Shown piece after piece: positions 16,179 through 29,431 of a DNA stretch of 64,000 nucleotides. Both the position numbers and the translations under genes were made by a program. The notes beneath the pieces were generated by a model. It did no database searches. It was not told the origin of the DNA and saw nothing but the letters and a program-made list of their open reading frames with translations. How positions within the stretch are numbered: position 1 is the first letter of the stretch; every line of letters begins with the position of its first letter. The stretch spans positions 124,001 to 188,000 of the IMG/VR virus record IMGVR_UViG_3300044701_002789; one strand, 5' to 3'.

Positions 16179-16955
16179 TTAAATAACTCTTGTTTTTTCG
16201 TGACCGACTCTTACGCGAGGGTCACACCAGATTTCAAAACCTGCGTCTTTTGCGTCAAGGCAGAATGAAACATCTTCCCCACACATGTCCTGAACGGCGC
16301 CTGATTCAAAAACTTGCATCTTAGGAGCAAACCAAGGATACTCAAGATTTTCAAAAACACCTTTCTTAATAAGGACCCAACCAAATCCAGTATAATCAAC
16401 TGTAAATGGTTTACGACGCTTGCTGATGGTCTCAACAGTTTCGTGATTCATGACACCACCGTTACGACGAAAATCTTCTTCGTCTAACCAATGGGCAACA
16501 GAGGTTGTGACACCATCTTCTGTAGCATACCATCCGGCAACAATTGATTTTTCTTCGCCTTCTTCTGGTAGTGACATATCACATAACTGCCAAAACTTTT
16601 CTGTGTTGAAGACAATATCACTATCAATCCAAAGTTGATAATCATATTCCAGTCTTCCATCCCAAGGAACTTGTTTTGGTCCCCTTAGAACATTTGCTCC
16701 GAGACACTTGCATCTTGCAAAGTTTACCATTGAGGAATAATCCTGGGATATTTGAATGCTCATTCCGTTTTGTACTAGATCAAAACAGAGTTGAACAAAT
16801 GCCTTTAAGAAAATGAAAGAACATCCTCGTCCAGGTAGACAGAAGACAATAGATTTGCCTTTCATTCTTTCTTTAATTTTTTCGTAGTCCCACTCCTGTT
16901 TTGGTGCAGTTGTGGGAGGTTTCGCTTTTACTGTAAATCCACGAGCCATTTTCAA
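16179..16955 (-). CDS. Glycosyltransferase-like (GT-A fold) protein
   Basis: DxD motif (WIDSDIVF), YTGFGWVLIKKGVFE and GEDVSFC; likely start MARG at 16949. Confidence 0.7.
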   Translation of the reverse strand: MKMARGFTVKAKPPTTAPKQEWDYEKIKERMKGKSIVFCLPGRGCSFIFLKAFVQLCFDLVQNGMSIQISQDYSSMVNFARCKCLGANVLRGPKQVPWDGRLEYDYQLWIDSDIVFNTEKFWQLCDMSLPEEGEEKSIVAGWYATEDGVTTSVAHWLDEEDFRRNGGVMNHETVETISKRRKPFTVDYTGFGWVLIKKGVFENLEYPWFAPKMQVFESGAVQDMCGEDVSFCLDAKDAGFEIWCDPRVRVGHEKTRVI

Positions 16956-17431
16956 TCCTCTAATAAATGTTTAAAAGTTTTATTATTTACAACATAAGAA
17001 ATTGTAGAGCGATGCACATTATACATTTCCGCAAGTTTAATAGTTGTATAATTATCCGATTTATATAGTTGTCTAATTCTGATTACATCAGTATTTTTTA
17101 ATCTTGATGCCCCATTATTTTCGCCTTTTTGATTACCAGTATAACATCTTCCTTTATTGACTTTATCTTTGACATTATCAAGATTAGTTCCAGAAAACAA
17201 ATGTGAAGGATTAACACACTTTGGATTATCACATCTATGAAGACAGTGGAGATTTCCCAAAGGTTCTGCATAATGAATTTCATAAGAAATTCTATGCGCC
17301 TTTAAAGTTTTTTTGTTTCTGCAAATGTACCCATAACCATGAGCATCAATTTTTCCTTGCCATTCCCAACATTCATTATCATCAAGTATATCTGGAAGAT
17401 ACTTGGAAAATTTTTCCAATAAATTCATCAA
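16952..17431 (-). CDS. HNH homing endonuclease with C-terminal HTH
   Basis: CWEWQG...AHRISY...CLHRCDNPKCVNPSHLFSGTNLDN; C-terminal LAEMYNVHRSTIS. Confidence 0.9.
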   Translation of the reverse strand: MMNLLEKFSKYLPDILDDNECWEWQGKIDAHGYGYICRNKKTLKAHRISYEIHYAEPLGNLHCLHRCDNPKCVNPSHLFSGTNLDNVKDKVNKGRCYTGNQKGENNGASRLKNTDVIRIRQLYKSDNYTTIKLAEMYNVHRSTISYVVNNKTFKHLLED

Positions 17432-17667: not shown

Positions 17668-18051
17668 TTGATTTACTTCGTCAGTGCATTATATATCATT
17701 ACTAATAAGATTCCGAGAGGGATTCCAATGATCCTAAACATTTGCTTAGGATAGCGTATTAACCAACCGGCAAATACTACTTTCCAAAAATTCCAATATG
17801 GCGGATTTTTTCTGGGAGAATTTTTTTTATACATCGGATTTTACTTGGGGGGAATTTTTATACCTCGGAGGATTTTTTGTTTCTTGTGAGTCTTATAGAA
17901 CTAGCGTGGGTCAGAGTTGTTATAGATTAGGGTAGTTGAACGTTTTTCAATCGCTAGGCGCGACCCATAAGGCGCCCTTATCCATCGGCATACTGTCGAT
18001 AAGCACGGTTAATAGGTGTCATTTAGCACGTACACATAAAGTATAGAGAAA

Positions 18052-18073
18052 GGGGGAGAGACTGTCCCTCCCC
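18052..18073 (-). terminator. Hairpin after 18083 gene
   Basis: GGGGGAG...CTCCCCC inverted repeat with T-rich tail on minus strand. Confidence 0.6.
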
Positions 18074-18082
18074 CGGTATACC

Positions 18083-18832
18083 TCACCATCCGAACTTGTC
18101 GGCACAGATAGGACCAATCCCCCGCTCAATGCTCTCCGGATTCGTTAGTTCCCGCCCACAGCATGAGCACTCCCCGGATACCTTACCGTAGCGAATCGCT
18201 GCGGTGAGGGGATCGGACGCTGCCGCCATGATGATCGCTTTGACATCATCGGGCAGGCGCGAATCCAGCGCCTTTCGGGTAACTTTACCCAGGTACTTGG
18301 GTTGGATTCCGTAGTTCCCTTCCTCAGTCTCAGTCTGAGATGTAACCCACAGCGCAGACATGTCGCGGTTGGGTTTCACATTAACCCCGGCGAATCGCAG
18401 GGTCAAACGCTTAGCACCCTTGCTACGTGCTGCCTCGAAAGCATTAAACAGTGCCTCAAACATGGAGAGGTCAGCATCATTCACCTTAGCAACATTCTGC
18501 TGCTTTTTAACATTATCCACGGCAAGTTTATGTGCCCAGGCATACTGAGATGCGCTCAGACGATTAAACTTAGCGGCAAGATCTTGTGCAAATTGTGAAC
18601 GCTGACCGCGAAGGGATTGCAGCACCTCAGCATCACTCAGATCAGAGGTAAAGTTAATCAAACCGTCGCGGCGGGTTGTTACACTAAACTGCTGCACTTT
18701 ACGATCCTCACACTGCGCCAGATCGTGCTCAAGATTAGCTGCCGCCTGAGGATTAGTACCGTGCAGACCGCGCAGCACCCGCTCCAGCAGGGCGTCAGTT
18801 TCGTTATGGCGGGCGGTGGTGGCGGTAGTCAT
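18083..18832 (-). CDS. Protein with C-terminal DUF6011-like Zn finger
   Basis: CSCCGRELTNPESIERGIGPIC; start moved to MTTAT because a promoter lies at 18883-18936. Confidence 0.8.
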   Translation of the reverse strand: MTTATTARHNETDALLERVLRGLHGTNPQAAANLEHDLAQCEDRKVQQFSVTTRRDGLINFTSDLSDAEVLQSLRGQRSQFAQDLAAKFNRLSASQYAWAHKLAVDNVKKQQNVAKVNDADLSMFEALFNAFEAARSKGAKRLTLRFAGVNVKPNRDMSALWVTSQTETEEGNYGIQPKYLGKVTRKALDSRLPDDVKAIIMAAASDPLTAAIRYGKVSGECSCCGRELTNPESIERGIGPICADKFGW

Positions 18833-18882
18833 AACCCTGGAACCGGTGGGGGATTCGGCGCTCCCCCGTTGCGCTTGATGAC

Positions 18883-18936
18883 ATCCTAGACGATCGCGGG
18901 GCACCCCGGAGGGTGCCCGTTACAATCGTTCACACT
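18883..18936 (-). promoter_or_regulatory. Early promoter: direct-repeat box, GC hairpin, -10 TAGGAT
   Basis: GTTACAAT-CG-TTCACACT (+ strand), GGGCACCC-TCCG-GGGTGCCC, 30 nt to -10. Confidence 0.6.
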
Positions 18937-19229
18937 TCCTCAGGGATCGCCTGCAGGCGCCCATCCTGGCGAGCGCGGGCGATCATCCGCCCCAGCGACT
19001 CGCCTCGCAGGTCAGTGTACCCGAGAACGTCAAACAGATCCGCCGTAAAGGCGGGGTCGGCGTCGAACCCGTAGGCGCGGGTCGGGTTGCGGTGGAAGAT
19101 CACCTCAACGAACCCAGGGGCGCCCGTGAGCACGCTGCCGGGTTCGACGTGCAGGTTGCGGATCGCGCTGCTCTCCGCCTCGCTGAAGGTGCGATAGAAG
19201 GCGCCGGAGAGAACGGTGGCGGTAGTCAT
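18930..19229 (-). CDS. Hypothetical protein (MTTATVLSG...)
   Basis: Shares leader and first codons with 18083 gene. Confidence 0.7.
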   Translation of the reverse strand: MTTATVLSGAFYRTFSEAESSAIRNLHVEPGSVLTGAPGFVEVIFHRNPTRAYGFDADPAFTADLFDVLGYTDLRGESLGRMIARARQDGRLQAIPEEV

Positions 19230-19486
19230 AACCCTGGAACCGGTGGGGCATTCGTGCGCTGCCCCGTTGCGCTTGATAGAAGTGTACAGGATCGGGGGGA
19301 CCATCGGACGCCCGTAGGGTGAGGGTTAGGTGAAAGTTTCCTGAAAGTTCTAGGTGAAGATTTAACCATTAAAGGCAGGCAGGGGAAGTGGCGACCTTTT
19401 GCGTCATCGGGGCGACCCTGCCCCTCTCCCTGTTGTCCTCTCAGTCTACAGGATGGGGGGACCGTTGCCGATCCCCGATGGACACC

Positions 19487-19696
19487 TCACCGATTGGCAC
19501 GGCGGCGGCGCAGTTCGTCGCCGTAGGTACACGCCTCGTCGCTGTAGCGTCCCTCAGCGATCGGGTTCCACCCGCGCATAGCCGCCTCCGCCTGGCGGGC
19601 GTCACGGGCGCTGTAGAGCAGCTCTTCGTCGCTCATCGTCTTCGCTCGCGCCTCCCAGCGGGTAAAGTCGGCGGCGGTGGCGTGGTTGGCGATCAT
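19487..19696 (-). CDS. Hypothetical protein
   Basis: Own promoter at 19721-19775. Confidence 0.75.
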   Translation of the reverse strand: MIANHATAADFTRWEARAKTMSDEELLYSARDARQAEAAMRGWNPIAEGRYSDEACTYGDELRRRRANR

Positions 19697-19720
19697 GGTT
19701 CGCTTGCGGTTGACTCTGGA

Positions 19721-19775
19721 ATTGTAGCATGGCGGAGGGCACCCCGGAGGGTGCCCCGTAACCTTTGTTCACAAT
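19721..19775 (-). promoter_or_regulatory. Early promoter: direct-repeat box, GC hairpin, extended -10 TGCTACAAT
   Basis: Same GGGCACCCTCCGGGGTGCCC hairpin as at 18900-18918. Confidence 0.6.
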
Positions 19776-19960
19776 GCCTCGGAATCCGGCAGGATGCCCC
19801 AGACGATTTCAAACCCGCCGATGTCGGAATCGCTCAGGCGGTTGACGCCCAGGTAGGCGCTGCCGATGCTCACGGCGAGCACCTCATCCCGCAGGCGGGC
19901 GCGGGTGTTGATCGAAACGTAGAAAGCGCGGCGCAGGATGCTGGGCGTGCGGATGATCAT
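19769..19960 (-). CDS. Hypothetical protein
   Basis: Own promoter (TGCTACGAT) about 19985. Confidence 0.7.
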   Translation of the reverse strand: MIIRTPSILRRAFYVSINTRARLRDEVLAVSIGSAYLGVNRLSDSDIGGFEIVWGILPDSEAL

Positions 19961-20027
19961 GGCGGTGCGTTGATTGCTTGTGGATCGTAGCATGGCGGGG
20001 GACCCGCTGTGGGTCCCCTAGAGGATC

Positions 20028-20216
20028 TCAGGCGGTCATCTGATCATACCGGATCCACTGACCGTTGACGTAGCACTCTACAACCGGGAGATACCCCAGA
20101 ACAGGAGCGAGGGCGGTTGCTGCCGCCGCTGCCATCGTCGGGGTCTCAAACTTCGCCTCCATTGAGAACCCGTGCTGCAGGCGGGCGTAGAAGCGGGGGG
20201 TGATGTTGAGTGCCAT
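20028..20216 (-). CDS. Hypothetical protein
   Basis: Promoter TTGACG-N17-GATTCT upstream. Confidence 0.7.
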   Translation of the reverse strand: MALNITPRFYARLQHGFSMEAKFETPTMAAAAATALAPVLGYLPVVECYVNGQWIRYDQMTA

Positions 20217-20334
20217 AGCGGAGTGTCGCGTGTTGACCCCTATAGAATCCCACGGATCGGTGCCCGCGTCAACCCCCGAACGATCAGCAACGCTTATCAG
20301 TCACAATGAGTCACAATGCCACGGTGGCGCCCAT

Positions 20335-20460
20335 GATGCGCTAGACTATGGACACAACGGAAGAAGAGCGGGGGCGCCGCGATGATACAAAACAAGTAAC
20401 CTACCCTGCCTGCAAATAATGGTTCATAAAGTATAAAAAAAGGAGGCATTTCTGCCTCCG
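20335..20460 (+). ncRNA. Repeated non-coding element, copy A (putative ncRNA)
   Basis: -10 TAGACT, GGGGGCGCC, GATGATACAAAA, CCTACCCT, A-run plus hairpin. Confidence 0.55.
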
Positions 20461-20471
20461 GTTGATTATAC

Positions 20472-20693
20472 TCAGGGGGTGGGATCGTAACCGTCCACCG
20501 CTTCATTGACAGCGGCGCTAGGTGTCATCCCTTTGTTGTAGGAATCAACCAGACAATCAAGGCACCAACCATCATCGGGGCATCCCATGATGTGCTCGAT
20601 GTAACTATCGCCCATGATGTAGTCGTATGCTTCGTTCCACCAGGCGGGGAAGTTGGCATCATCAAAGCAGGTCTCAGTGGTGATCTGGGTCAT
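20472..20693 (-). CDS. Hypothetical protein
   Basis: Own promoter; GGAG before MTQ start. Confidence 0.7.
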   Translation of the reverse strand: MTQITTETCFDDANFPAWWNEAYDYIMGDSYIEHIMGCPDDGWCLDCLVDSYNKGMTPSAAVNEAVDGYDPTP

Positions 20694-20777
20694 CGGGGTT
20701 CTCCCTTTGGTTGACTTGTCCATTGTAGGGCATGGGGAGGCATCCTGTCGCCTCCCCTTGTGCAGGTTCACAAACCG

Positions 20778-21026
20778 TCACAGCATGGAAACTAGGCGCA
20801 TGAGACTGGATACCTGCACCGGAGTCTGCCATGGCATAATTTCATCCAGCATGTTGCCGCTTGGGCGTATAATTGCCACCTCAAAAGTATCCTGCCCGAT
20901 TGTACCCTTAAGACCGGAACCTTCGGGTCCAGAAACTACAGAAACTCCCCAACCATTGTCAAAGGTACGCTGAGCGATTGTAGCACCTTTGAGACTATGA
21001 TCGCGGAAGGTGAGAGTGGAGAACAT
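20778..21026 (-). CDS. Hypothetical protein
   Basis: Own promoter and GTTCACCAC leader. Confidence 0.75.
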   Translation of the reverse strand: MFSTLTFRDHSLKGATIAQRTFDNGWGVSVVSGPEGSGLKGTIGQDTFEVAIIRPSGNMLDEIMPWQTPVQVSSLMRLVSML

Positions 21027-21101
21027 GGTGCGGTTCGGGTGGTGAACTGAAAGAATTGTAGGGCATGGGAGGGGGGATCGGTGTCCCCCCTTGTGACAGT
21101 T

Positions 21102-21263
21102 TCAGCGTTGGAACTGTGCCATGCTGCTGGGGGCGATGTGGGCGGGCGATCCGCAGGAGCGATAAAATCCTACCATACGCTGCGCCTCCTGAACAGTGGG
21201 GAACCACTGGGAGCGCCACTGGCAGTCCCCGTAGGGGACTTGATAGCGAACCTCAATCCTCAT
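21102..21263 (-). CDS. Hypothetical protein (MRIEVRYQVPYG...)
   Basis: Own promoter TGCCCTACACT. Confidence 0.7.
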   Translation of the reverse strand: MRIEVRYQVPYGDCQWRSQWFPTVQEAQRMVGFYRSCGSPAHIAPSSMAQFQR

Positions 21264-21340
21264 CGGTGTCTGCATGGGTTGGTTGCGACTGGATACAGTG
21301 TAGGGCATGAGAGGGCAGGATCGCTGCCCCCAGTGGACAC

Positions 21341-21670
21341 CTAGGCGACTGTCACAAGGTCACGCCAGGCGCCATAAGTTTCTGACACATTCTCCAGAAA
21401 CTTAATCACTGCAGGATAAACCTCACAGCGCACCCAAGTATAAGAAACTGAAAGAAAGTTCCAAACTTTCTTGATAATCTGAAGGGTAGCATCTTTGCCA
21501 CCATTCTGATACCATTCTTGTGTTTTCTTGAAGATGACATAAACAATGGCGGCGATTGTGAGGCACACGGTTTCTACCGTGTCCATGTAGTTGTTGAAAT
21601 GTTTCTGATAGTTAATGCTCTTAAGATGAGCGATCAGAGCATCAGCGGGGGGGAAGGCGGGGGAGTTCAT
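21341..21670 (-). CDS. Hypothetical membrane protein
   Basis: Hydrophobic segment LTIAAIVYVIF; own promoter. Confidence 0.7.
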   Translation of the reverse strand: MNSPAFPPADALIAHLKSINYQKHFNNYMDTVETVCLTIAAIVYVIFKKTQEWYQNGGKDATLQIIKKVWNFLSVSYTWVRCEVYPAVIKFLENVSETYGAWRDLVTVA

Positions 21671-21804
21671 GATCTTAGGCGACGGGGGGGAATGTAGAGC
21701 GGTGCCCGTCGTTGAAACTACCATAACCGACAGGGAGGCATCCTGCCAAGGGGTCTTGTGCCACCGCTCAGACTGTCCACCTGATGCCACGCTGGGGTCT
21801 GATG

Positions 21805-21930
21805 GGGTGCTATGATTGTCTCACAAGCGAAGAAGAGCGGGGGCGCCGCGATGATACAAAACAAGACACTTACCCTGCTCGTAAATAATAGGATCTTAAG
21901 TATAAAAAAATGGAGGCATTTCTGCCCCCA
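21805..21930 (+). ncRNA. Repeated non-coding element, copy B
   Basis: -10 TATGAT, near-identical core to copy A. Confidence 0.55.
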
Positions 21931-21940
21931 TAAGTTATAA

Positions 21941-22261
21941 TCAGCGAAGAATCATTCCTGATACAAAATCCTCCACAATTCCATCATGTTTGATCTTCCA
22001 TTGAAAGTCTTTCTGATAGACTTTCTTATCACCGCAACCATTCTCAGAAAGAATAGCATTCAGGCGGGACTTTGTGGTGGTTGTCTGATGTCCGCCATCA
22101 TAAAGTTTCAGGAAACCTTCTCCAATCTCAGCGATCAGGTTTCCATAAAGAAACACTCGTGAGATCTCATTTCCTGCTTCATACTCTACACGAGTGTTTG
22201 CAGATTTCCAATCGTAACGATTGGAAATCGCTTTGTTCATTTTGCGTTCGATGACTCGCAT
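21941..22261 (-). CDS. Hypothetical protein
   Basis: Own promoter; TTTKSRLNA motif resembles a common phage family. Confidence 0.75.
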   Translation of the reverse strand: MRVIERKMNKAISNRYDWKSANTRVEYEAGNEISRVFLYGNLIAEIGEGFLKLYDGGHQTTTTKSRLNAILSENGCGDKKVYQKDFQWKIKHDGIVEDFVSGMILR

Positions 22262-22329
22262 GGGGTGAATCCCTCAGGAACAGATCTAAGATAGCAGGGG
22301 GAGGGGGGGTTTCGCAACCCCCCGGTGTG

Positions 22330-22635
22330 TCAGTTGTCGGATTGGTCGGATTGGTCGGATTGGTCGGATTGGTCAGACCGGACCAGGATAGCAGCGACCA
22401 GGCGGTCCCGCTTGCGGATCGCGGTGGGAACCATTTCCCACTTGTGACGCTTGCCATTGGCGCTACGGGTGGCGCTCAGGATGCCTGCATCCTCCATGTC
22501 CACCATCAGGGCATGGATGGTGCCCTTGTGACGCTTCGGGTCCAGTCCCAGATCCCGCACCAGTTCGGAGCAGGTCTTAGAACCGGTCTGAATCAGGTGG
22601 GAGCGGATGCTGGTGCGGATGATGCTGGAAAGCAT
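22330..22635 (-). CDS. Putative winged-helix DNA-binding protein
   Basis: TCSELVRDLGL...TIHALMVDMEDAGILSATR...HKWEM pattern fits wHTH. Confidence 0.55.
   Translation of the reverse strand: MLSSIIRTSIRSHLIQTGSKTCSELVRDLGLDPKRHKGTIHALMVDMEDAGILSATRSANGKRHKWEMVPTAIRKRDRLVAAILVRSDQSDQSDQSDQSDN
22333..22372 (+). repeat. 9-bp tandem repeat (GTCGGATTG) x about 4
   Basis: Directly visible; encodes SDQSDQSDQSD. Confidence 0.95.
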
Positions 22636-22743
22636 GGGGTGTTCGTGTGAACTGAAAGAATCATAGGGCATGGGATGCCACCAGGCAACCACTCCTGACC
22701 AGTTCCCAAACTGGCACACCAGACCCCACACCTGACCCCATCC

Positions 22744-22870
22744 ATGCCTTATACTATGGGGACAATGAAACGAACGGGGGCGCCGTGATGATACAAAACA
22801 AGACACTTACCCTGCACGCAAATAATAACAACAAAAGTATAAAAAAAGGGAGAGGATTTGCCTCTCCCAA
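22744..22870 (+). ncRNA. Repeated non-coding element, copy C
   Basis: -10 TATACT, GGGGGCGCC, CTTACCCT, A-run plus hairpin. Confidence 0.55.
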
Positions 22871-22874
22871 TTAT

Positions 22875-22994
22875 TCATGATTCCTCTTCGTCGTTTATCA
22901 TAACTTGGAAGAGTTCGGCAAGTTCATCATCGCTCATGTCGCTGATAATGATGTATCCTTGCTCTTCAATTTGCTGTTTCAGATCAAAGATCAT
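22875..22994 (-). CDS. Small acidic protein, 39 aa
   Basis: MIFDLKQQIEEQGY...; followed by terminator. Confidence 0.55.
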   Translation of the reverse strand: MIFDLKQQIEEQGYIIISDMSDDELAELFQVMINDEEES

Positions 22995-23034
22995 GAGAGG
23001 TTCGGTGGTGAACTGCAGATAGTGTAGCAGACGA

Positions 23035-23178
23035 TCAGCGGCAGTCGCGGGATGCTTCACAGATCGTAACAGCAACCCGGTCGGCATGTGCCTTGGCAAC
23101 CTGAAGGGCAGACAAACCCAGACCGCTGCCAATGTAGAGCAGGGAACCGATCAGGAGGATGTTAGGGAGGCGTCGCAT
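23035..23178 (-). CDS. Small membrane protein, 47 aa
   Basis: Hand-translated MRRLPNILLIGSLLYIGSGLGLSAL...; directly after leader hairpin. Confidence 0.6.
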   Translation of the reverse strand: MRRLPNILLIGSLLYIGSGLGLSALQVAKAHADRVAVTICEASRDCR

Positions 23179-23240
23179 GGTTCAGTGGTGAACTGAGAGG
23201 ATTCTAGGGCATGGGGACCGTTCCCGGTCCCCTTTGGTGG

Positions 23241-23429
23241 TCACTTTGCAAACAGTCTCCGAAACGCTCCAGCAATCTCCCAAGACTTTAGAATCTGAGG
23301 TTGACCATGAATCAAAACCATTTCCTGATGATTGTAAAGAACCCAGGAGATTTGATCCTTTGGATCTTTATCTTTGTCTTCCAACTTACAGCAAGTTGCG
23401 TAAGTTCTTACCAGTTGTGTGAGAGACAT
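23241..23429 (-). CDS. Hypothetical protein
   Basis: Own promoter and leader hairpin. Confidence 0.65.
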   Translation of the reverse strand: MSLTQLVRTYATCCKLEDKDKDPKDQISWVLYNHQEMVLIHGQPQILKSWEIAGAFRRLFAK

Positions 23430-23549
23430 TGTGGTTCAGGTGGTGAACTGAGATAATCTTATACGGTGTGGGATCTTATGTCAAGGGTTTTCTGATAAGG
23501 ATCTCTTATGATAGGAAAGGGGGCATAAGATTGCCCCCTATTCCTTATC

Positions 23550-24077
23550 TCAGTCCGCCCAACGGATGCCCTTGATCTCAAGATACTCCACCAAACGTGT
23601 AGCGTATTCGCCACAGTGAGGGCAACGGATTTCATGCCGAACGATAGCACGATCCTTGGACTTATCTGCAGGATTATTATAGTTCTTCATTTTGAGGCGA
23701 TAGATTGCGGCAAGAGTGCGCAACAGTTCTTCGATCTTAAGATCCTTTCCGCGATACTTGAAGTAAACGGGGATGAAGTGGCGGAAGTCATTCATCCGGC
23801 GGCACTTGTCAAGTTGAGAAACAATCCAACGCGACTCATCAATGTCGCCCAGGATCTCATTCAGGCAAACCTCAAACGCTGCGTTCGTTGTTTCAATCAC
23901 AGCAACATTTTGTCCGATTTCTTTCATGCGCTCATCATAACGCTGTTGCTGAACAGAAGAAACCTGATCATCAAAAGAAACCTTACGCTGCTCCATGTGT
24001 TGCTGCATGAGCACCATAAGGGCACGCATCTGATCGTCGTTGAAACCGTCAAAGTTGAGAGCAGTGGCGGCAGGCAT
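23550..24077 (-). CDS. Hypothetical protein with C-terminal CxxC
   Basis: Start moved to MPAAT after promoter about 24135; RCPHCG. Confidence 0.75.
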   Translation of the reverse strand: MPAATALNFDGFNDDQMRALMVLMQQHMEQRKVSFDDQVSSVQQQRYDERMKEIGQNVAVIETTNAAFEVCLNEILGDIDESRWIVSQLDKCRRMNDFRHFIPVYFKYRGKDLKIEELLRTLAAIYRLKMKNYNNPADKSKDRAIVRHEIRCPHCGEYATRLVEYLEIKGIRWAD

Positions 24078-24219
24078 GGTAGACTCTGGGATTGGGTTTG
24101 CTGGCGGTCGGGGTGTTTCCCTCCCGCCGATGCACATAGTATGCCACGGGGGAACCCACCCCAGCAACCAGGATTGTGCCACTGCCCAAACCGTCCTCAG
24201 GTGGCACAGCAGACCCCCA

Positions 24220-24350
24220 TCATGCCCTATACTATGGGGACAACGGAATGAGGAGCAGGGTCGCTCTGATGACATAAAAGGTCGCCACTTACCCTTCTTT
24301 ATTATAATTATTACAAAAGAATAAAAAAGAACCCCGAAGGGTTCTTTATA
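24220..24350 (+). ncRNA. Repeated non-coding element, copy D
   Basis: -10 TATACT, CTTACCCT, A-run plus hairpin at the same spacing. Confidence 0.5.
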
Positions 24351-24354
24351 AGAA

Positions 24355-24513
24355 TCAGACTTCATCGGTTGGGTCTAAGATCTCTACCCATGCGTTAGGA
24401 TAGCGTTCTGCCCAATAATCATACCGATCATCAGCATCATCATAGGTGCCGAAAGTTTCCAGAATCTTGAAGTTTTCGTTCTCAAACTTGGCGATCTTAA
24501 AGAGTTTTGCCAT
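24355..24513 (-). CDS. Hypothetical protein
   Basis: Own promoter and leader hairpin. Confidence 0.7.
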   Translation of the reverse strand: MAKLFKIAKFENENFKILETFGTYDDADDRYDYWAERYPNAWVEILDPTDEV

Positions 24514-24585
24514 GGGAGTTCTGTGGTGAACTGAGAGAATTGTAGGGCATGGGGGTGATCCTGTCACCCCCTAGTGTGCCAGTGG

Positions 24586-25341
24586 TCAGACCGTCACAGT
24601 TTTCTTACTGTAACCTCCGAACTGTTTGTTAGAACGACGGGCACGGATTGCGGCGCCCCATTCTGAACCTTTCGGTTGCGTGCCATGCACAAGCAAAGCG
24701 AACGGTTTATCACCGAAGCAGTGTGAATCATCGTGGTCAACTTCCAGACCCAGACGTTCAGCGTCCGCATCATTCATGCAGACTTTGCTATAACGTGGGA
24801 AGTAACCTTCGTCGATCAGGTAATCAAACCGACCACCATACGATGCGGTCATGTAGAAGTTACTGGGCAACTTGAAGTTAAGAAACAACCGCAGACTCTT
24901 AGAGTAGCAGTAGAACTTAAGATCAGGATTGCGATGGGCAACCTCAATCCATGCGTCAAGATACGCACCAGAGAAGAAGTCTCCAGACTCATGAATGCGC
25001 ACCAATTCTGTTTTCTTAGTGCGATGATGTTGGATGCTGTCGTGGATAAGATCCGCAGCACTGACAGAGTAACCTGGGACAGTTCCGTTCTGCAGAGCAT
25101 CAACAATCAACTCCAGATTGCGGGCGCGATTGTTGAAGACAGCATCATACTGCACCTCAGAAGATGCAGCGAAACACCGAAACTCAGTGTGTTCGCCATC
25201 AACAATCCTACGCTTTCCGTCGTCACCAACGACAGCAAAAGACTTGCAAAACATTGCACCGGGGCATGTCTTACCTGCAGGCAGGTTGAAGATCAGCGTG
25301 TGAGTGCCAAGTTTGGCGTTGCCTTTGGAGAAGTTCAGCAT
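24586..25341 (-). CDS. Gene product 88 (GP88)-like protein
   Basis: SKGNAKL...FNLPAGKTCPGA...C...CFA...VRIHESGDFFS...FYCYSKS. Confidence 0.75.
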   Translation of the reverse strand: MLNFSKGNAKLGTHTLIFNLPAGKTCPGAMFCKSFAVVGDDGKRRIVDGEHTEFRCFAASSEVQYDAVFNNRARNLELIVDALQNGTVPGYSVSAADLIHDSIQHHRTKKTELVRIHESGDFFSGAYLDAWIEVAHRNPDLKFYCYSKSLRLFLNFKLPSNFYMTASYGGRFDYLIDEGYFPRYSKVCMNDADAERLGLEVDHDDSHCFGDKPFALLVHGTQPKGSEWGAAIRARRSNKQFGGYSKKTVTV

Positions 25342-25413
25342 CGGAGGAATCCCGTTGACTTGATCAGTATAAGGGGTGAGAGGGCACCCTTGCGAGTGCC
25401 CTTGTGCCAGTGG

Positions 25414-25698
25414 TCAGACCGTCCAGTTCAGCACTTGACCACGGTAGGCAATCCGACGCACACGGTTAGCGTCAAAGGAACGCCATGCACCGATTCCGTC
25501 ACGTTTCGCAACATCAAAGTCGCGAACACGGAAGATGTCAGGATTATTGCTAGGGCGACCAGTGCCCACAATCTCCTGGCGATCTTTAGGATTAAAACGA
25601 ATCTTCCGAAGCGTACCATCACGCTTCACAAACTCTACAGAAACAATGGTAGAACCTAGAGTAGAAAAGAGTTCGCGGATCTGTTCGGAGCGAGTCAT
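25414..25698 (-). CDS. WYL-like/SH3-fold small protein
   Basis: VSVEFVKRDGTLRKI...VRDFD...AWRSF. Confidence 0.5.
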   Translation of the reverse strand: MTRSEQIRELFSTLGSTIVSVEFVKRDGTLRKIRFNPKDRQEIVGTGRPSNNPDIFRVRDFDVAKRDGIGAWRSFDANRVRRIAYRGQVLNWTV

Positions 25699-25777
25699 GA
25701 GAGTTCAGTGGTGAACGATGTAAATGTAACAGGGCACCTGACCGGAATCAAGTGCCCTTGTGCCACCTGTCAAAGTG

Positions 25778-26035
25778 TCAGACTGTCGCTTCCTTCAGTT
25801 CACCGGAACGGCGAGCATTAAAGACAAGCGAACCAACGCTAGCACCCTGCGCAAGAGTGTCGTTAAGTTTAGTTACGAAACTGCCAGAAGTGCTGACATA
25901 GGTGTAACTTTTGTCGGGATTGGTCTGATAGGCAAGTTCTACCCGATCAGACTGACTGGTAGCACTAATGCTAGCAATCGCCTCAGATTCTTCAGTTGTA
26001 AATGTGCGGTTAATAACAATCATATTCATACTCAA
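25778..26035 (-). CDS. Hypothetical protein, loosely KTSC-like
   Basis: SEAIASI...VELAY...SYTY...ASVGSLV spacing. Confidence 0.5.
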   Translation of the reverse strand: MSMNMIVINRTFTTEESEAIASISATSQSDRVELAYQTNPDKSYTYVSTSGSFVTKLNDTLAQGASVGSLVFNARRSGELKEATV

Positions 26036-26193
26036 AAGTCAATGTAATCAGTTTCAGTAGTTGTACCTGCAGCGACAAGTTCGCCGCCTTCAGTTTCCTC
26101 ATTCATATCTTCCGCGATGCTATCAAGCACAGAGAGAATGTCGTTACCAGTGTTACACTGGTTAAGCATGATCTCAGCAATGGTGAAGTTCAT
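26032..26193 (-). CDS. Small acidic protein, 53 aa
   Basis: Hand-translated MNFTIAEIMLNQCNTGNDILSVLDSIA... Confidence 0.65.
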   Translation of the reverse strand: MNFTIAEIMLNQCNTGNDILSVLDSIAEDMNEETEGGELVAAGTTTETDYIDF

Positions 26194-26306
26194 AATAAAA
26201 ACAAAGGGTTTTCTGATGTGTGCAGTTTATAGTCTTACTCAGGACTATCAAATCTTACAGCACATCAGGATCTTATGTCAAGTCTGATGTGCCAGTTTCT
26301 TATGTG

Positions 26307-26504
26307 TCACACCTTAAGATCCATGATCTCAAGAAACTGCATTCTGATAGGTTCACCATTGACAGTGAAGAAAACAGAACATCTGTCAATCTCAATGTCA
26401 CCATCAACAACACTAAGATCAACATAATGCCCACCATCATTATCAGAAATGTAAGGATTACCTTCAGTTTCATACCCAACATAGTAAAGGGTATCATTGA
26501 CCAC
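26307..26504 (-). CDS. Hypothetical protein
   Basis: Co-directional ORF. Confidence 0.6.
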   Translation of the reverse strand: MVNDTLYYVGYETEGNPYISDNDGGHYVDLSVVDGDIEIDRCSVFFTVNGEPIRMQFLEIMDLKV

Positions 26505-26550
26505 TACAGCATAAGAATCCCCAAGAAGATCATGGAACTTCTGAACAGAA

Positions 26551-26739
26551 TCAGGATACTTCAGATTCGGTGGTCACAGTCTCATCAGTGGACGGTTTCA
26601 CAGGTGGCACACGGAGATTATAAGGACTGTTAAAAAACCTCCTAAAAGAAGTGACCAGAATAATACCCGTTGAAAGAACACCAATAAACCCAAGGATGGT
26701 AACAGCATTACCAGTGAAATCAAGAGTGTCAGGCATCAT
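26551..26739 (-). CDS. Small membrane protein
   Basis: One hydrophobic helix. Confidence 0.7.
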   Translation of the reverse strand: MMPDTLDFTGNAVTILGFIGVLSTGIILVTSFRRFFNSPYNLRVPPVKPSTDETVTTESEVS

Positions 26740-26879
26740 CAGAATTCGTAAGAGGAATCAAGGGGAAGACCAGCGGCAAGATCATCATAATAATCTTCCA
26801 CTTCAAACTTAGTTTCTTCATCATCCCAATCATAAGGAATGACTTCTTCAATCTGCTGTTCAGCAACAAATGGGTCCAT
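26739..26879 (-). CDS. Small acidic protein (MDPFVAEQQIEE...)
   Basis: Start moved downstream of promoter about 26900. Confidence 0.6.
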   Translation of the reverse strand: MDPFVAEQQIEEVIPYDWDDEETKFEVEDYYDDLAAGLPLDSSYEF

Positions 26880-26984
26880 GTCGGTGATTTGCGGACGAAT
26901 CAAATATACCCCATCAGAACCCAACCACACAATACCCCTTGTGCCACTGAACAATCTGACCACTGATCACCCCATCAGACATCA

Positions 26985-27115
26985 GATCCCTTATGATATA
27001 CACATAATCTGATGAGGTCTGGGGTAGGACTTATGATGTAAACAGTCGTAACTTACCCTGCTTAATAATAATCATAAGAATATAAAAAAAGAGTTGGGTA
27101 TAATAACCCAACTCA
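26985..27115 (+). ncRNA. Repeated non-coding element, copy E
   Basis: -10 TATGAT, CTTACCCTG, A-run plus hairpin. Confidence 0.5.
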
Positions 27116-27121
27116 TTCATA

Positions 27122-27382
27122 TCAGGCAATCTGAACACATGCACCTTTTCTTAGTTGAGTGTATGTATTATACGGGTTCTTACCATCATATCCAGAATTG
27201 TAATGATGAATGCCATAATAATAACGGCGTGCATTGGTTTCAGTCATACCAAACTGCTCTCCCATTTCCCGGAAGGATGCTTTAGGATGTTCTTTCCTGT
27301 AATGATTCAGGACACTACACCACATCAAGGCATTTTCAGTGCAGCGAATGCTTTTCTCCGGGTGAAGTTTAATGGTTTTCAT
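27122..27382 (-). CDS. Putative HTH protein
   Basis: ASFREMGEQFGMTETNARRYY. Confidence 0.6.
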   Translation of the reverse strand: MKTIKLHPEKSIRCTENALMWCSVLNHYRKEHPKASFREMGEQFGMTETNARRYYYGIHHYNSGYDGKNPYNTYTQLRKGACVQIA

Positions 27383-27418
27383 GAGGTTCTGATGTGAACA
27401 GTAATAAGATAACAGAGA

Positions 27419-28597: not shown

Positions 28598-29431
28598 ATG
28601 AAAACAGGAACGATTTACTGTATTACAAACATTTCCAATGGTAAACAGTACATTGGTCAAACCAAACATGAATTGAACAAAAGATGGAAAGAGCACTTAT
28701 ATGAATCTAAGAAGTATAATACCAGACCTCTTTACAGAGCATTAAACAAATACGGTACTGATTCTTTCAAGATAAGAATACTAGAAGAATGTCCTATAGA
28801 AAAATTAAATGAAAGAGAAACTTATTGGGTTAATAAGTTAGATACTTACCACAACGGATATAATGCTACTTCAGGTGGAGATCATTTTGAACATGCAGAA
28901 GAAAATAAGATAAAAATATCCAATGGAATGTCTAATGTGGAGAGAACTGATGAATGGACCAATAATGTATCTAAAGCATTGAAGAACAAAATTAAAAATG
29001 GAGAACTATGGGGCATTCTTACTGGAAAATATAGCAATACGGATAAATTAAAACGTAAAGTGAAAGCGATTAAATTAGAAACCGGAGAAGAGTTTATATT
29101 TGATAGTATGCGAGAAGGTGCAAGAGAACTTACTGGAAATGTGGCAAATAGTGGAAATATATGCAGATCAATAAAGGAAGGATTTACTGTATATGGATAT
29201 AAGTGGGAAAAACTGGATCAGACTCCAACAAAAAGACCAGTAATAGGTGTCCATAAACGAACAGAAGAAATTGTTAGATATGATAGCATGAGATCCGCTG
29301 CTTACGATTTAACTGGCGAATCAAGAAAAGCGGGTGGTGGTTTACGGAAAAGTGTGTTAAATCCAGGAAAGAATAGTTGGATGGGTTATTATTGGTATTA
29401 TGAAGAAGAATACAATCCAGAAGTTCAATAA
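28598..29431 (+). CDS. GIY-YIG homing endonuclease with two NUMOD1-like domains
   Basis: GTIYCITN...KQYIGQT...RWKEH...E..W...GYN; two FDSMR.AA modules; only long plus-strand gene. Confidence 0.9.
   Translation: MKTGTIYCITNISNGKQYIGQTKHELNKRWKEHLYESKKYNTRPLYRALNKYGTDSFKIRILEECPIEKLNERETYWVNKLDTYHNGYNATSGGDHFEHAEENKIKISNGMSNVERTDEWTNNVSKALKNKIKNGELWGILTGKYSNTDKLKRKVKAIKLETGEEFIFDSMREGARELTGNVANSGNICRSIKEGFTVYGYKWEKLDQTPTKRPVIGVHKRTEEIVRYDSMRSAAYDLTGESRKAGGGLRKSVLNPGKNSWMGYYWYYEEEYNPEVQ

What the first reader, a model, noticed from the sequence alone, without database searches (positions are those of the whole stretch)
20335..27115. Five dispersed copies of an about 120-nt non-coding antisense element with fixed internal spacing
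Seen: copies at about 20335-20460, 21805-21930, 22744-22870, 24220-24350 and 26985-27115, all on the plus strand, opposite to every neighbouring gene. Each has a -10 box, a short hairpin, GATGA, AAAA, C(T/C)TACCCT, an AT-rich stretch, then TAAAAAA abutting the terminator of the convergent gene. The -10 to CTTACCCT distance is 53, 53, 51, 55, 55 nt and CTTACCCT to A-run is 35, 35, 35, 35, 32 nt, even though D and E have diverged. The hairpin covaries (GCGG/CCGC, ACGG/CCGT, GAGC/GCTC, AGGTC/GACTT) and its G-rich loop (AGGGT in D, GGGGTA in E) is complementary to the conserved ACCCT, which suggests a pseudoknot. I recognise no named RNA family. Inference: a new structured ncRNA, or T4-style R-loop replication origins (promoter plus downstream AT-rich unwinding element), or antisense control of the adjacent genes.
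Basis: partly seen in the sequence, partly recalled or inferred. Interest (0 to 1): 0.8.

Follow-up and report, generated by a model that had tools for sequence, protein, structure and literature searches.

The report
Antisense promoter-bearing RNA cassettes in cyanophage
The five repeats are real copies of a large, undescribed family of short non-coding units, each with its own promoter, that sit at the ends of early-gene units in uncultured T4-like cyanophages and mostly point against the neighbouring genes; what they do is not yet known.

Summary
The window holds five plus-strand copies and a sixth, degenerate minus-strand copy at 19339-19448, with none elsewhere in the 64 kb.

The window is part of a T4-like cyanomyovirus from a freshwater metagenome. 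Pattern scans and a covariance model found about 200 further copies (about 110 distinct) in other uncultured phage contigs. No convincing copy turned up in cellular genomes, cultured phages or Rfam. In some contigs there is one copy per small gene (9-11 copies in 6-10 kb).

Every copy has a sigma-70-type -10 box, often TGn-extended, 6-7 nt before a conserved ACAA. A 4-bp hairpin follows, with strong covariation (99.8% paired, 102 double changes). Next comes a roughly 45-nt conserved block that shows no further covariation.

The A-run and hairpin at the 3' end form the terminator of the convergent gene. They are a canonical terminator only on that gene's strand.

About 85% of callable copies are antisense to the flanking genes. 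Between related phages, homology in this region is largely confined to these modules.

Best reading: the antisense arm of a PeSL-like promoter/terminator cassette, producing a short convergent RNA or antisense leader. A trans-acting multicopy sRNA remains a serious rival. The pseudoknot is only weakly supported. R-loop origins and a micro-peptide are unlikely. No RNA data exist.

The parts
20342..20459 (+). Copy A, whole unit
   Evidence: CM hit of 94 bits. Sub-features: -10 TAGACT 20342-20347; ACAA 20354; hairpin 20368-20380; conserved block 20381-20420 (CYTACCCTKC at 20400-20409); A-run 20435-20441; hairpin 20442-20459.
21811..21931 (+). Copy B, whole unit
   Evidence: CM hit of 93 bits. Sub-features: -10 TATGAT 21811-21816; ACAA 21823; hairpin 21837-21849; block 21850-21889; A-run 21904-21910; hairpin 21910-21931.
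22750..22868 (+). Copy C, whole unit
   Evidence: CM hit of 97 bits. Sub-features are listed as separate entries below.
24228..24347 (+). Copy D, whole unit (diverged, with a 1-nt insertion in the block)
   Evidence: CM hit of 68 bits. Sub-features: -10 TATACT 24228-24233; ACAA 24240; hairpin 24252-24267; block 24268-24308; A-run 24323-24328; hairpin 24326-24347.
26992..27114 (+). Copy E, whole unit (diverged, AT-richer)
   Evidence: CM hit of 62 bits. Sub-features: -10 TATGAT 26992-26997; ATAA 27004; hairpin 27015-27032; block 27033-27069; A-run 27084-27090; hairpin 27091-27114, with a GTATAAT loop.
19339..19448 (-). Copy F, a sixth and degenerate copy in the SAME orientation as the genes. 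It has no A-run or terminator.
   Evidence: CM hit of 52 bits, E about 8e-9. Sub-features: -10 TAGACT 19443-19448; hairpin 19409-19424; CTTCCCCTGC 19379-19388. It lies upstream of the minus-strand ORFs 18930-19304 and 18083-18904 (DUF6011). The sense copy in L021 sits in the same kind of place.
22750..22755 (+). Copy C: -10 box TATACT of the unit's own promoter
   Evidence: Of 110 distinct copies, 70 have TAnnnT 6-7 nt before ACAA. Of those, 40 are TGn-extended and 9 have a good -35.
22762..22765 (+). Copy C: conserved ACAA, the likely transcription start
   Evidence: A, A and A are nearly invariant in alignment A5 columns 9, 12 and 13. The distance to the -10 box is fixed. The start site is inferred, not mapped.
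22774..22786 (+). Copy C: 4-bp hairpin ACGG/CCGT with a purine-rich loop
   Evidence: 99.8% of 432 cells are paired and 102 cells changed on both sides. No shuffle out of 500 reaches this. These pairs have the top mutual information.
22787..22826 (+). Copy C: conserved block with no covariation beyond the hairpin (RAUGAYAYAAAHC..G..CACYUACCCUGC..AUAAU)
   Evidence: Columns are invariant or nearly so in 108 distinct copies. The A-rich part is predicted unpaired (0.8-0.9). CCCUGC is predicted mostly paired (unpaired probability 0.2-0.4) with the hairpin's 5' strand and loop.
22841..22868 (.). Copy C: A-run plus GC hairpin. This is the intrinsic terminator of the convergent minus-strand gene (hairpin followed by a run of seven T, then ATA, on the minus strand).
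   Evidence: Terminator scan. In the family, the A-run upstream is at least 6 of 9 in 53 of 73 copies, but a T-run on the element's own side is at least 5 of 9 in only 12 of 73.

Best explanation
The repeats belong to a new family of short non-coding transcription units. The units are about 75 nt, or about 110 nt counted to the end of the neighbouring terminator hairpin. They are specific to a lineage of uncultured T4-like cyanophages.

Anatomy:
- Each unit has its own host-type (sigma-70) promoter placed 6-7 nt before a conserved ACAA start.
- A purine-rich tract and a small covarying hairpin follow.
- Then comes a roughly 45-nt conserved block that shows no covariation beyond the hairpin.

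I read the unit as the antisense arm of a composite promoter/terminator cassette that marks the ends of early-gene transcription units in the hyperplastic region. It is a relative in kind of the PeSL cassettes of T4-type phages.

Proposed working:
- RNA polymerase starting at the unit makes a short RNA that runs head-on into the terminator of the convergent gene.
- That RNA is complementary to the 3' end of the gene's mRNA. Because the hairpin has no U-tract on this side, the RNA probably continues as antisense RNA.
- The conserved 5' block would then be a generic cis-acting leader. It is most likely a binding site for a protein or for the polymerase, not a folded catalytic or ligand-binding RNA.
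- The same conserved modules also act as the shared sequence between otherwise unrelated gene cassettes.

Shown: existence, family size, promoter conservation, hairpin covariation, orientation bias, terminator asymmetry and cassette-boundary position.

Inferred: that the unit is transcribed, where its RNA ends, and everything about its effect.
For: - Six copies score in the window, with E from about 1e-8 to about 1e-19.
- The model gives 202 hits in 92 sources, about 110 of them distinct. Some contigs hold one copy every 500-700 bp (L005: 9 copies in 6.3 kb; L015: 11 in 10 kb).
- Promoter: 70 of 110 copies have TAnnnT 6-7 nt before ACAA, 40 of those are TGn-extended, and some have a perfect TTGACA-N17. 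A further 35 use a gene-type promoter with a leader.
- Hairpin covariation.
- No other covarying pairs. The A-rich part of the block is predicted unpaired.
- Where the flanking ORFs can be called, 46-48 are antisense and 8-9 are sense.
- The 3' hairpin is a canonical terminator only for the convergent gene.
- All five strong minus-strand terminators between 20 and 27.2 kb carry a copy.
- Between L005 and L015, homology in this region is limited to E-containing modules of 215-250 bp plus one gene-plus-module stretch and a helicase block. A 310-bp gene indel is bounded by copies.
- Between the window and the other loci, the widely shared segments are the copies, a DUF6011 gene and a GP88 gene. 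A few other segments are shared with one to three loci.
- Host lineage markers are present: gp6 baseplate, GP88, Kyano_Gp96 and UvrD-like helicase.
- The neighbouring genes are mostly small ORFs of unknown function.
- Background on PeSL cassettes comes from PMC4122927 and PMC2839356.
Against: - There is no transcript evidence. No RNA run was listed.
- A purely cis or antisense role does not explain why a roughly 45-nt block is conserved independently of the neighbouring gene.
- About 15% of copies are in sense orientation and lack the terminator (copy F; L021 type; L005:12832).
- Only one subfamily has an own-strand terminator placed where a gene-spanning antisense RNA would end (9 of 110).
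- In the window there are only five copies for about 25 small genes, so 'one per gene' does not hold everywhere.
Confidence: 0.42

Rival explanations
1. A multicopy trans-acting small RNA, or an RNA decoy. Each unit would make a discrete early RNA of about 100 nt. Its conserved block (ACYUACCCUGC and the A-rich stretches) would pair with a conserved host or phage RNA, or soak up a protein such as an RNase, S1, or a RegA- or gp32-like RNA binder. Many copies would simply raise the dose.
For: - The layout is the classic sRNA one: own promoter, 5' hairpin, conserved block, A-rich stretch, 3' hairpin.
- The block is conserved regardless of the neighbouring gene and across phages of different GC content.
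- Sense-oriented copies exist, so antisense placement is not obligatory.
Against: - The 3' hairpin lacks a U-tail on the unit's own strand. T is at least 5 of 9 in 12 of 73 copies, close to a rough binomial estimate for this base composition.
- The strong bias towards convergent placement is unexplained.
- A duplex scan of the 64-kb window found no target apart from the units' own antisense strand and copy F.
- The CCCUGC part of the proposed seed is predicted mostly paired within the unit.
- The scan of 185,579 species genomes gave five hits, none in cyanobacteria, about the number I estimated for chance. That bears on host homologues, not on host targets. Host genomes could not be searched for targets.
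Confidence: 0.25
2. A mainly DNA-level element. It would be a conserved recombination or mobility module (PeSL-like or selfish) that spreads gene cassettes by homologous or site-specific exchange. The promoter would be part of the cassette and the RNA incidental.
For: - Homology between related contigs is largely confined to these modules, and an indel is bounded by copies.
- Near-identical cores occur in phages of different GC content.
- The window's copies A-C and F lie in a 50-60% GC island inside a 26-38% GC genome.
- Precedent: PeSL-mediated shuffling (PMC4122927).
Against: - Plain homology for recombination does not need invariant single positions interleaved with free ones.
- It does not need strict Watson-Crick covariation in a 4-bp stem whose sequence differs between copies of one genome.
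- It does not need a fixed distance from the promoter to the hairpin.
- No recombinase was seen. Contigs from the source samples gave no reliable recombinant joints.
Confidence: 0.13
3. A small RNA switch or pseudoknot. The G-rich loop, or the 5' stem strand plus the loop, would pair with the invariant CCCUGC. This would give either an H-type pseudoknot or two exclusive folds that respond to a ligand, a protein or the ribosome.
For: - Loop columns 30-32 can pair with CCCU in 90% of cells. R30 always faces U70. There is one compensatory A:U change.
- Complementarity between the stem/loop and CCCUGC is somewhat above composition-matched shuffles. Duplex energy is -9.0 against -7.3 kcal/mol, and 16 of 108 copies fall in the best 5% of their own shuffles.
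- Minimum-energy folds of copies B-E use this long-range helix. Whole-unit z-scores range from -1.1 (B) to -5.0 (E).
Against: - CCCUGC never varies, so there is almost no covariation.
- There are 25 A.C mismatches at pair 32-68. The AGAGA and AGAA loop subfamilies cannot form the helix.
- RNAalifold keeps only the hairpin.
- No Rfam riboswitch or ribozyme model matches even at lenient thresholds.
Confidence: 0.08
4. T4-style R-loop replication origins: a promoter followed by a downstream AT-rich unwinding element, whose transcript primes DNA synthesis.
For: A promoter is followed by a purine- and A-rich transcribed strand and an AT-rich stretch.
Against: - Up to 9-11 copies lie in 6-10 kb, one per small gene.
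- The best-conserved block (CACYUACCCUGC) and the covarying GC hairpin are not features of an unwinding element.
- The AT-rich 3' part belongs to the convergent terminator and is missing from sense copies.
Confidence: 0.03
5. A micro-gene for a peptide of about 20-25 residues ending in ...ERGRRDDTKQDTYPAxK.
For: - One frame is open in 77% of copies and ends at a conserved TAA.
- Variable columns fall mostly on third codon positions.
- One subfamily (the L013 type) has a ribosome-binding site and GTG, TTG or ATG in frame.
Against: - More than half of the copies have no start codon downstream of the promoter.
- 23% have internal stops.
- Copies D and E carry a frameshifting 1-nt insertion yet keep all conserved bases on both sides.
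- The share of synonymous changes (0.27) is no higher than in column-shuffled controls (mean 0.27).
Confidence: 0.04

Closest known systems
PeSL (promoter-early stem-loop) cassettes of T4-type phages (Arbiol et al. 2010, PMC2839356; Comeau et al. 2014, PMC4122927)
   Same: Both are small composite promoter-plus-terminator modules repeated between small ORFs of unknown function in hyperplastic regions of T4-like genomes. Both are conserved while the genes between them differ, and both mark indel and replacement boundaries between related phages.
   Different: Here the promoter points against the flanking genes in about 85% of callable cases. The module also carries a conserved transcribed sequence of about 75 nt with a covarying hairpin. 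PeSLs are described only as a promoter and a stem-loop. The window additionally has ordinary gene-sense PeSL-like cassettes (hairpin followed by CATGCCCTACAAT).
Multicopy bacterial sRNA families (for example Qrr, or the cyanobacterial Yfr2 family; named from my own knowledge)
   Same: Both have an own promoter, a 5' stem-loop, a conserved block, a 3' hairpin and several paralogous copies per genome.
   Different: There is no U-tail on the unit's own strand and no target was found. Copy density is far higher. Placement is convergent with genes. There is no Rfam match.
Cis-antisense RNAs of cyanophages (S-PM2 antisense RNA linking psbA and F-CphI, cited in PMC10690425; genome-wide antisense RNAs of P-SSP7, from my own knowledge)
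   Same: Both are phage-encoded transcripts opposite to phage genes in cyanophages.
   Different: Those are unique loci with no shared conserved leader. Here a common leader with its own promoter is repeated at many gene ends.
Promoter-proximal antitermination leaders (lambda nut boxA/boxB, HK022 put, rrn boxB-boxA; from my own knowledge)
   Same: Both have a small hairpin next to a conserved linear box in the first roughly 70 nt of a transcript, one copy per transcription unit, acting in cis.
   Different: There is no sequence similarity, no N-like protein was identified and nothing was tested. This is a resemblance in layout only.
T4 oriF/oriG R-loop origins (from my own knowledge)
   Same: Both have a promoter followed by an AT-rich region.
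   Different: Copy number and density are far too high. The conserved GC hairpin and the CCCUGC box are not needed by an unwinding element. The AT-rich part belongs to the neighbouring terminator.

Membership tests
PeSL regulatory cassette | Strong sigma-70-like early promoter | tested here: met
   TAnnnT lies 6-7 nt before ACAA in 70 of 110 copies. Of these, 40 are TGn-extended and 9 have a -35 matching at least 5 of 6. A further 35 have a promoter plus a leader.
PeSL regulatory cassette | Adjacent stem-loop that terminates transcription | tested here: met
   A GC hairpin with a run of about seven T on the gene strand abuts each of the five plus-strand copies. The same holds in most family members.
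PeSL regulatory cassette | Repeated between small non-essential ORFs of a hyperplastic region of a T4-like genome | tested here: met
   T4-like markers are present. The neighbours are mostly ORFs of unknown function.
PeSL regulatory cassette | Promoter oriented to drive the next gene on the same strand as the flanking genes (my own reading of the PeSL layout; the text read does not state orientation) | tested here: not met
   Flanking ORFs are antisense in 46-48 callable cases and sense in 8-9. All five window copies oppose their neighbours.
PeSL regulatory cassette | Homology between related genomes confined to the cassettes, with indels bounded by them | tested here: met
   L005 against L015. 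Window island against the other loci. This rests on one pair of contigs and one island, so it is not a population study.
Any Rfam 15 family | Match at the family's gathering score | tested here: not met
   There are no hits at gathering score in the window. No relevant hit appears at E up to 5 in 17800-27400, or at E up to 0.1 in five other loci.
T4-type R-loop origin | Few, dispersed sites per genome | tested here: not met
   Six copies lie in 8 kb here, and 9-11 in 6-10 kb elsewhere.
T4-type R-loop origin | Origin activity, meaning a persistent RNA-DNA hybrid that primes synthesis | not testable with these tools
   This needs 2D gels or DRIP-seq.
Trans-acting sRNA | Intrinsic terminator (hairpin plus U-tail) on its own strand | tested here: not met
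   T is at least 5 of 9 after the hairpin in only 12 of 73 copies, close to a rough binomial estimate for this composition.
Trans-acting sRNA | Conserved accessible seed with a complementary target | tested here: inconclusive
   The block is conserved and its A-rich part is predicted unpaired, but CCCUGC is predicted mostly paired within the unit. No target was found in the 64-kb window. Host genomes could not be searched.
H-type pseudoknot or small riboswitch | Second helix supported by covariation | tested here: inconclusive
   90.4% of cells are compatible, with 1 double change and 25 mismatches at pair 32-68.
Protein-coding micro-gene | Start codon, intact frame and an excess of synonymous change | tested here: not met
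   More than half of the copies lack a start, 23% have internal stops, copies D and E are frameshifted, and the synonymous fraction is no higher than in column-shuffled controls.

The most novel reading that the evidence does not exclude
A new class of phage regulatory RNA: a promoter-equipped early leader repeated up to about ten times within a 6-10-kb stretch of a cyanophage genome. In one version it modifies the transcribing polymerase or the fate of the transcript, so that gene-spanning antisense RNAs or head-on collisions enforce the boundaries of early-gene units in a host that lacks Rho. In the other version the copies together flood the infected cell with a decoy for a host or phage RNA-binding factor.
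Probability: 0.3. Interest if true: 0.8.

Novelty: new variant of a known kind. Interest (0 to 1): 0.6.

Why it matters
Hyperplastic regions of T4-like phages are where new genes are tried out. How their many tiny transcription units are started, stopped and shuffled is known only in outline, through PeSLs in coliphages and vibriophages.

This family shows that a lineage of environmental cyanophages uses a more elaborate cassette. It has a conserved, apparently transcribed element that mostly faces backwards into the preceding gene.

If the RNA is made, it offers a concrete handle on antisense or convergent transcription control in cyanophage infection. It also bears on how termination is secured in Rho-less cyanobacteria.

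It is a ready-made marker (covariance model R1) for finding cassette boundaries in metagenomic phage genomes. If it acts in trans, it would be one of the most highly reiterated phage sRNAs known.

Tried and rejected
- Rfam at gathering and lenient thresholds, on the window and on five other loci: nothing relevant.
- BLAST of two element types against 50,697 phage records: no cyanophage hit. The pattern scans of 2.9 million viral contigs returned only contigs named as uncultivated viral genomes.
- Scan of one genome for each of 185,579 species: five hits in unrelated bacteria, about the number I estimated for chance. I did not inspect these individually.
- RNA-seq: no RNA run was listed. Laying contigs from the four DNA runs only showed unitig breaks at copies A and B and short-sided joints that I do not trust.
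- Peptide coding: rejected.
- Extra helices: mutual information over all column pairs found only the hairpin. A UGAY/GWCA mini-hairpin forms in under half of the copies.
- K-turn, C/D-box, hammerhead and preQ1-I resemblances recalled from memory: their flanking requirements are not met in the sequences, and the Rfam models do not match.
- ATG after the hairpin as a start codon: present in only about 85% of copies and out of the conserved frame.
- Trans targets in the window: none.
- TATAAATA late-promoter idea for the TATAAAGAAT motif: TATAAATA occurs only three times in the window, fewer than the shuffles give, so this was uninformative.
- Own-strand terminators upstream of the next copy, which would delimit an antisense unit: found in one subfamily only.
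- tRNA or tmRNA: none.
- DUF6011 protein as a possible partner: no solved relative and no informative structural neighbour.

Full report
**What the window is**

The 64-kb window carries a gp6-type baseplate wedge gene (12862-14784), a 4053-residue ORF, an HNH endonuclease, and GP88 and Kyano_Gp96 genes. Its gp6 is 55-59% identical to those of Synechococcus and Prochlorococcus myoviruses. It is therefore a T4-like cyanomyovirus.

The DNA is held by freshwater metagenome runs. Four IMG/VR contigs of 224-258 kb carry this region 100% identical to the window. Those samples may be the window's own source, so this is not independent confirmation.

The finding lies in a 50-60% GC island (about 17.9-26 kb) inside a 26-38% GC genome. 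All ORFs there are on the minus strand, and most are small and of unknown function.

**The observation**

The five copies align over about 120 nt. A covariance model built from 22 family members (A4, R1) and run without filters finds exactly six hits in the window. These are the five plus-strand copies and a sixth, degenerate copy on the minus strand at 19339-19444 (first seen).

**The family**

Degenerate-pattern scans found the element in many other metagenome-derived viral contigs and metagenome contigs.

The scan of one genome for each of 185,579 bacterial and archaeal species gave only five hits, all in unrelated bacteria. That is about the number I estimated for chance.

BLAST against 50,697 deposited phage records found no cyanophage match. 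Rfam has no model for the element.

Model R1 gives 202 hits in the 92 sources held, about 110 of them distinct. In several contigs a copy recurs every 500-700 bp. L005 has 9 in 6.3 kb, L015 has 11 in 10 kb and L058 has 8.

Loci carrying the element also carry gp6, GP88, a UvrD-like helicase and a DUF6011 gene. The family therefore belongs to one lineage of T4-like cyanophages. In at least three contigs it sits next to the baseplate module.

**Anatomy: what is shown**

1. Promoter.
   - Of 110 distinct copies, 70 have TAnnnT (mostly TAGACT or TATACT) ending 6-7 nt before a conserved ACAA.
   - Of these, 40 carry the TGn extension (1 in 16 expected by chance), and several have a perfect TTGACA 17 bp upstream.
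   - A further 35 copies use a promoter about 45 nt further upstream. It is followed by a gene-type leader, a ribosome-binding site and a conserved three-codon mini-ORF.
   - The remaining five have the box at a slightly shifted offset.

2. Hairpin.
   - A 4-bp stem pairs in 99.8% of 432 cells. There are 102 cells changed on both sides, against 30 in shuffles and 8 or fewer when the partner is slid.
   - Two G.U pairs occur on the plus strand. On the minus strand they would be A.C mismatches. This weakly favours the plus-strand RNA.

3. Everything else is conserved as linear sequence.
   - Ten positions are invariant and about fifteen nearly so in 108 distinct copies.
   - No further Watson-Crick covariation appears in RNAalifold or in mutual information.
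   - The A-rich part is predicted unpaired.

4. The 3' A-run and hairpin.
   - A is at least 6 of 9 before the hairpin in 53 of 73 copies. T is at least 5 of 9 after it in only 12 of 73, close to a rough binomial estimate for this base composition.
   - On the opposite strand the hairpin is a textbook terminator for the convergent gene.
   - Sense-oriented copies (F in the window; the L021 type; L005:12832) lack this part entirely.
- The element proper therefore ends at the AAUAAU box.

**Context**

Where flanking ORFs can be called, they are antisense to the element in 46-48 cases and sense in 8-9 (first seen).

In the window, each of the five strong minus-strand terminators between 20 and 27.2 kb carries a copy. 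The other intergenic regions carry a gene-sense cassette instead: a hairpin directly followed by CATGCCCTACAAT and a conserved leader.

Between L005 and L015, homology in this region is confined to modules of 215-250 bp that contain the element, one gene-plus-module stretch and one helicase block. A 310-bp gene indel is bounded by copies.

Between the window's island and the other loci, the widely shared segments are the element copies, the DUF6011 gene (21 loci) and the GP88 gene (7 loci). A few other segments are shared with one to three loci.

This is the pattern described for PeSL cassettes in T4-type phages (PMC4122927; PMC2839356). There is one decisive difference: here the promoter faces backwards.

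**Interpretation**

The fixed promoter-to-hairpin geometry, one unit per terminator, and the lack of an own-strand U-tail point to a cis-acting unit. It would fire head-on into the end of the preceding early-gene unit.

Its RNA must be complementary to the 3' end of that gene's mRNA. It probably continues as antisense RNA. Head-on collision could also reinforce termination. That cyanobacteria lack Rho is my own background knowledge.

The gene-independent conservation of the 5' block implies a generic partner, such as the polymerase or an RNA-binding protein. It could equally mean a trans role, which I keep as the main rival.

I cannot separate these without transcript data, and none was listed.

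**Ideas tested and set aside**

- Pseudoknot. The loop can pair with CCCU in 90% of cells. CCCUGC never varies, there is one compensatory change, and the AGAGA and AGAA loop subfamilies cannot pair. Complementarity between the 5' stem strand plus loop and CCCUGC is only modestly above shuffles. Even so, minimum-energy folds of copies B-E use it. It remains possible but unproven.
- Peptide. One frame (...ERGRRDDTKQDTYPAxK, then a stop) is open in 77% of copies, with third-position-like variation. However, most copies lack a start, 23% have internal stops, and copies D and E are frameshifted yet conserved. Synonymous change is not enriched.
- R-loop origins. Copy density and the nature of the conserved block argue against them.
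- Trans targets in the window. None was found.

**Limits**

- All inference is comparative.
- The alignment used for pair counts was fitted to the model's hairpin.
- Orientation calls use longest-ORF heuristics.
- The cassette-boundary evidence rests on a few contig pairs.
- The element may be among unnamed candidates in large viral RNA-motif surveys (PMC10690425). I could not check that.

Noticed in passing
window 17900-26000: A 50-60% GC island sits inside a 26-38% GC phage genome. Four IMG/VR contigs carry this region 100% identical to the window, though the samples may be the window's own source. It looks like a block acquired from a higher-GC cyanophage. An HNH endonuclease ORF (16952-17431) and a GIY-YIG seg-like ORF (28598-29431) lie near its two ends.
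   Followed up: partly
window 20722-20734, 21055-21067, 21297-21309, 22660-22672, 23201-23213, 24539-24551 (minus strand): This is a second repeated cassette, in gene sense. A variable GC hairpin is followed directly by CATGCCCTACAAT (a -10 box), a conserved leader (TCTCAGTTCACCAC) and the start codon. It is an ordinary PeSL-like promoter cassette. Two of the antisense units (C and D) use the same CATGCC(C/T)TATACT box.
   Followed up: partly
L013:7780-7830 (minus strand), L005:10985-11023, L053, L058:7740-7780 and about 30 other copies: About a third of family members are preceded by a gene-type promoter, a ribosome-binding site and a conserved three-codon mini-ORF (WTG ANN GYY TRA). The mini-ORF ends 4-5 nt before the element. 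Its purpose is unexplained.
   Followed up: partly
window 27091-27114; L005:8762-8788; many loci: Many of the convergent terminator hairpins have variable, complementary stems but a conserved loop, GTATAAT or GTATAAC, which resembles a -10 box. This may be a second conserved motif. The TATAAAGAAT stretch before the A-run is also conserved and sometimes forms inverted repeats (L019, L070).
   Followed up: no
window 18083-18904 (minus strand) and 21 other loci: A gene for a protein with a C-terminal DUF6011 domain is linked to the element-rich region in 21 loci. In L021-type loci a sense-oriented copy directly precedes it. In the window, copy F precedes its two-gene unit. The protein has no solved relative and no informative structural neighbour. 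It could be a partner of the element.
   Followed up: partly
window 18040-18074: A strong minus-strand terminator lies at the island's left edge. It has the same tail as the element-associated terminators (CATAAAGTATAGAGAAA followed by a hairpin) but no element next to it. It may be a remnant.
   Followed up: no
window 18812-18850 and 19216-19254: Two adjacent minus-strand ORFs (18083-18904 and 18930-19304) share a nearly identical stretch of about 40 nt around an internal ATG. This suggests duplication or exchange of gene 5' ends.
   Followed up: no
window 22336-22374: A perfect 9-nt tandem repeat (GTCGGATTG, 4.3 copies) lies at the 3' end of the minus-strand ORF 22330-22635.
   Followed up: no
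L013:10420-10450 (minus strand); L019, L059, L066, L084: In one subfamily a canonical terminator on the element's own strand (GCCAGTTAGCGAACTGG followed by a run of seven or eight T) lies about 45 nt upstream of the element's promoter. It could end an antisense RNA coming from the previous unit, or a separate tiny RNA.
   Followed up: partly
L065:1-70 (minus-strand view downstream of the copy at 73-171): The contig ends in what looks like Illumina adapter sequence (GATCGGAAGAGCACACGTCTGAACTCCAGTCAC...). This is an assembly artefact in that public record.
   Followed up: no
L015:11120-11415: A tRNA gene (69 bits) lies next to a group I intron-like match at 47.9 bits, just under the gathering score of 50.
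   Followed up: no
window 699-12860 (minus strand): A 4053-residue ORF with a YHYH domain lies next to the baseplate genes. It is presumably a giant structural or fibre protein.
   Followed up: no
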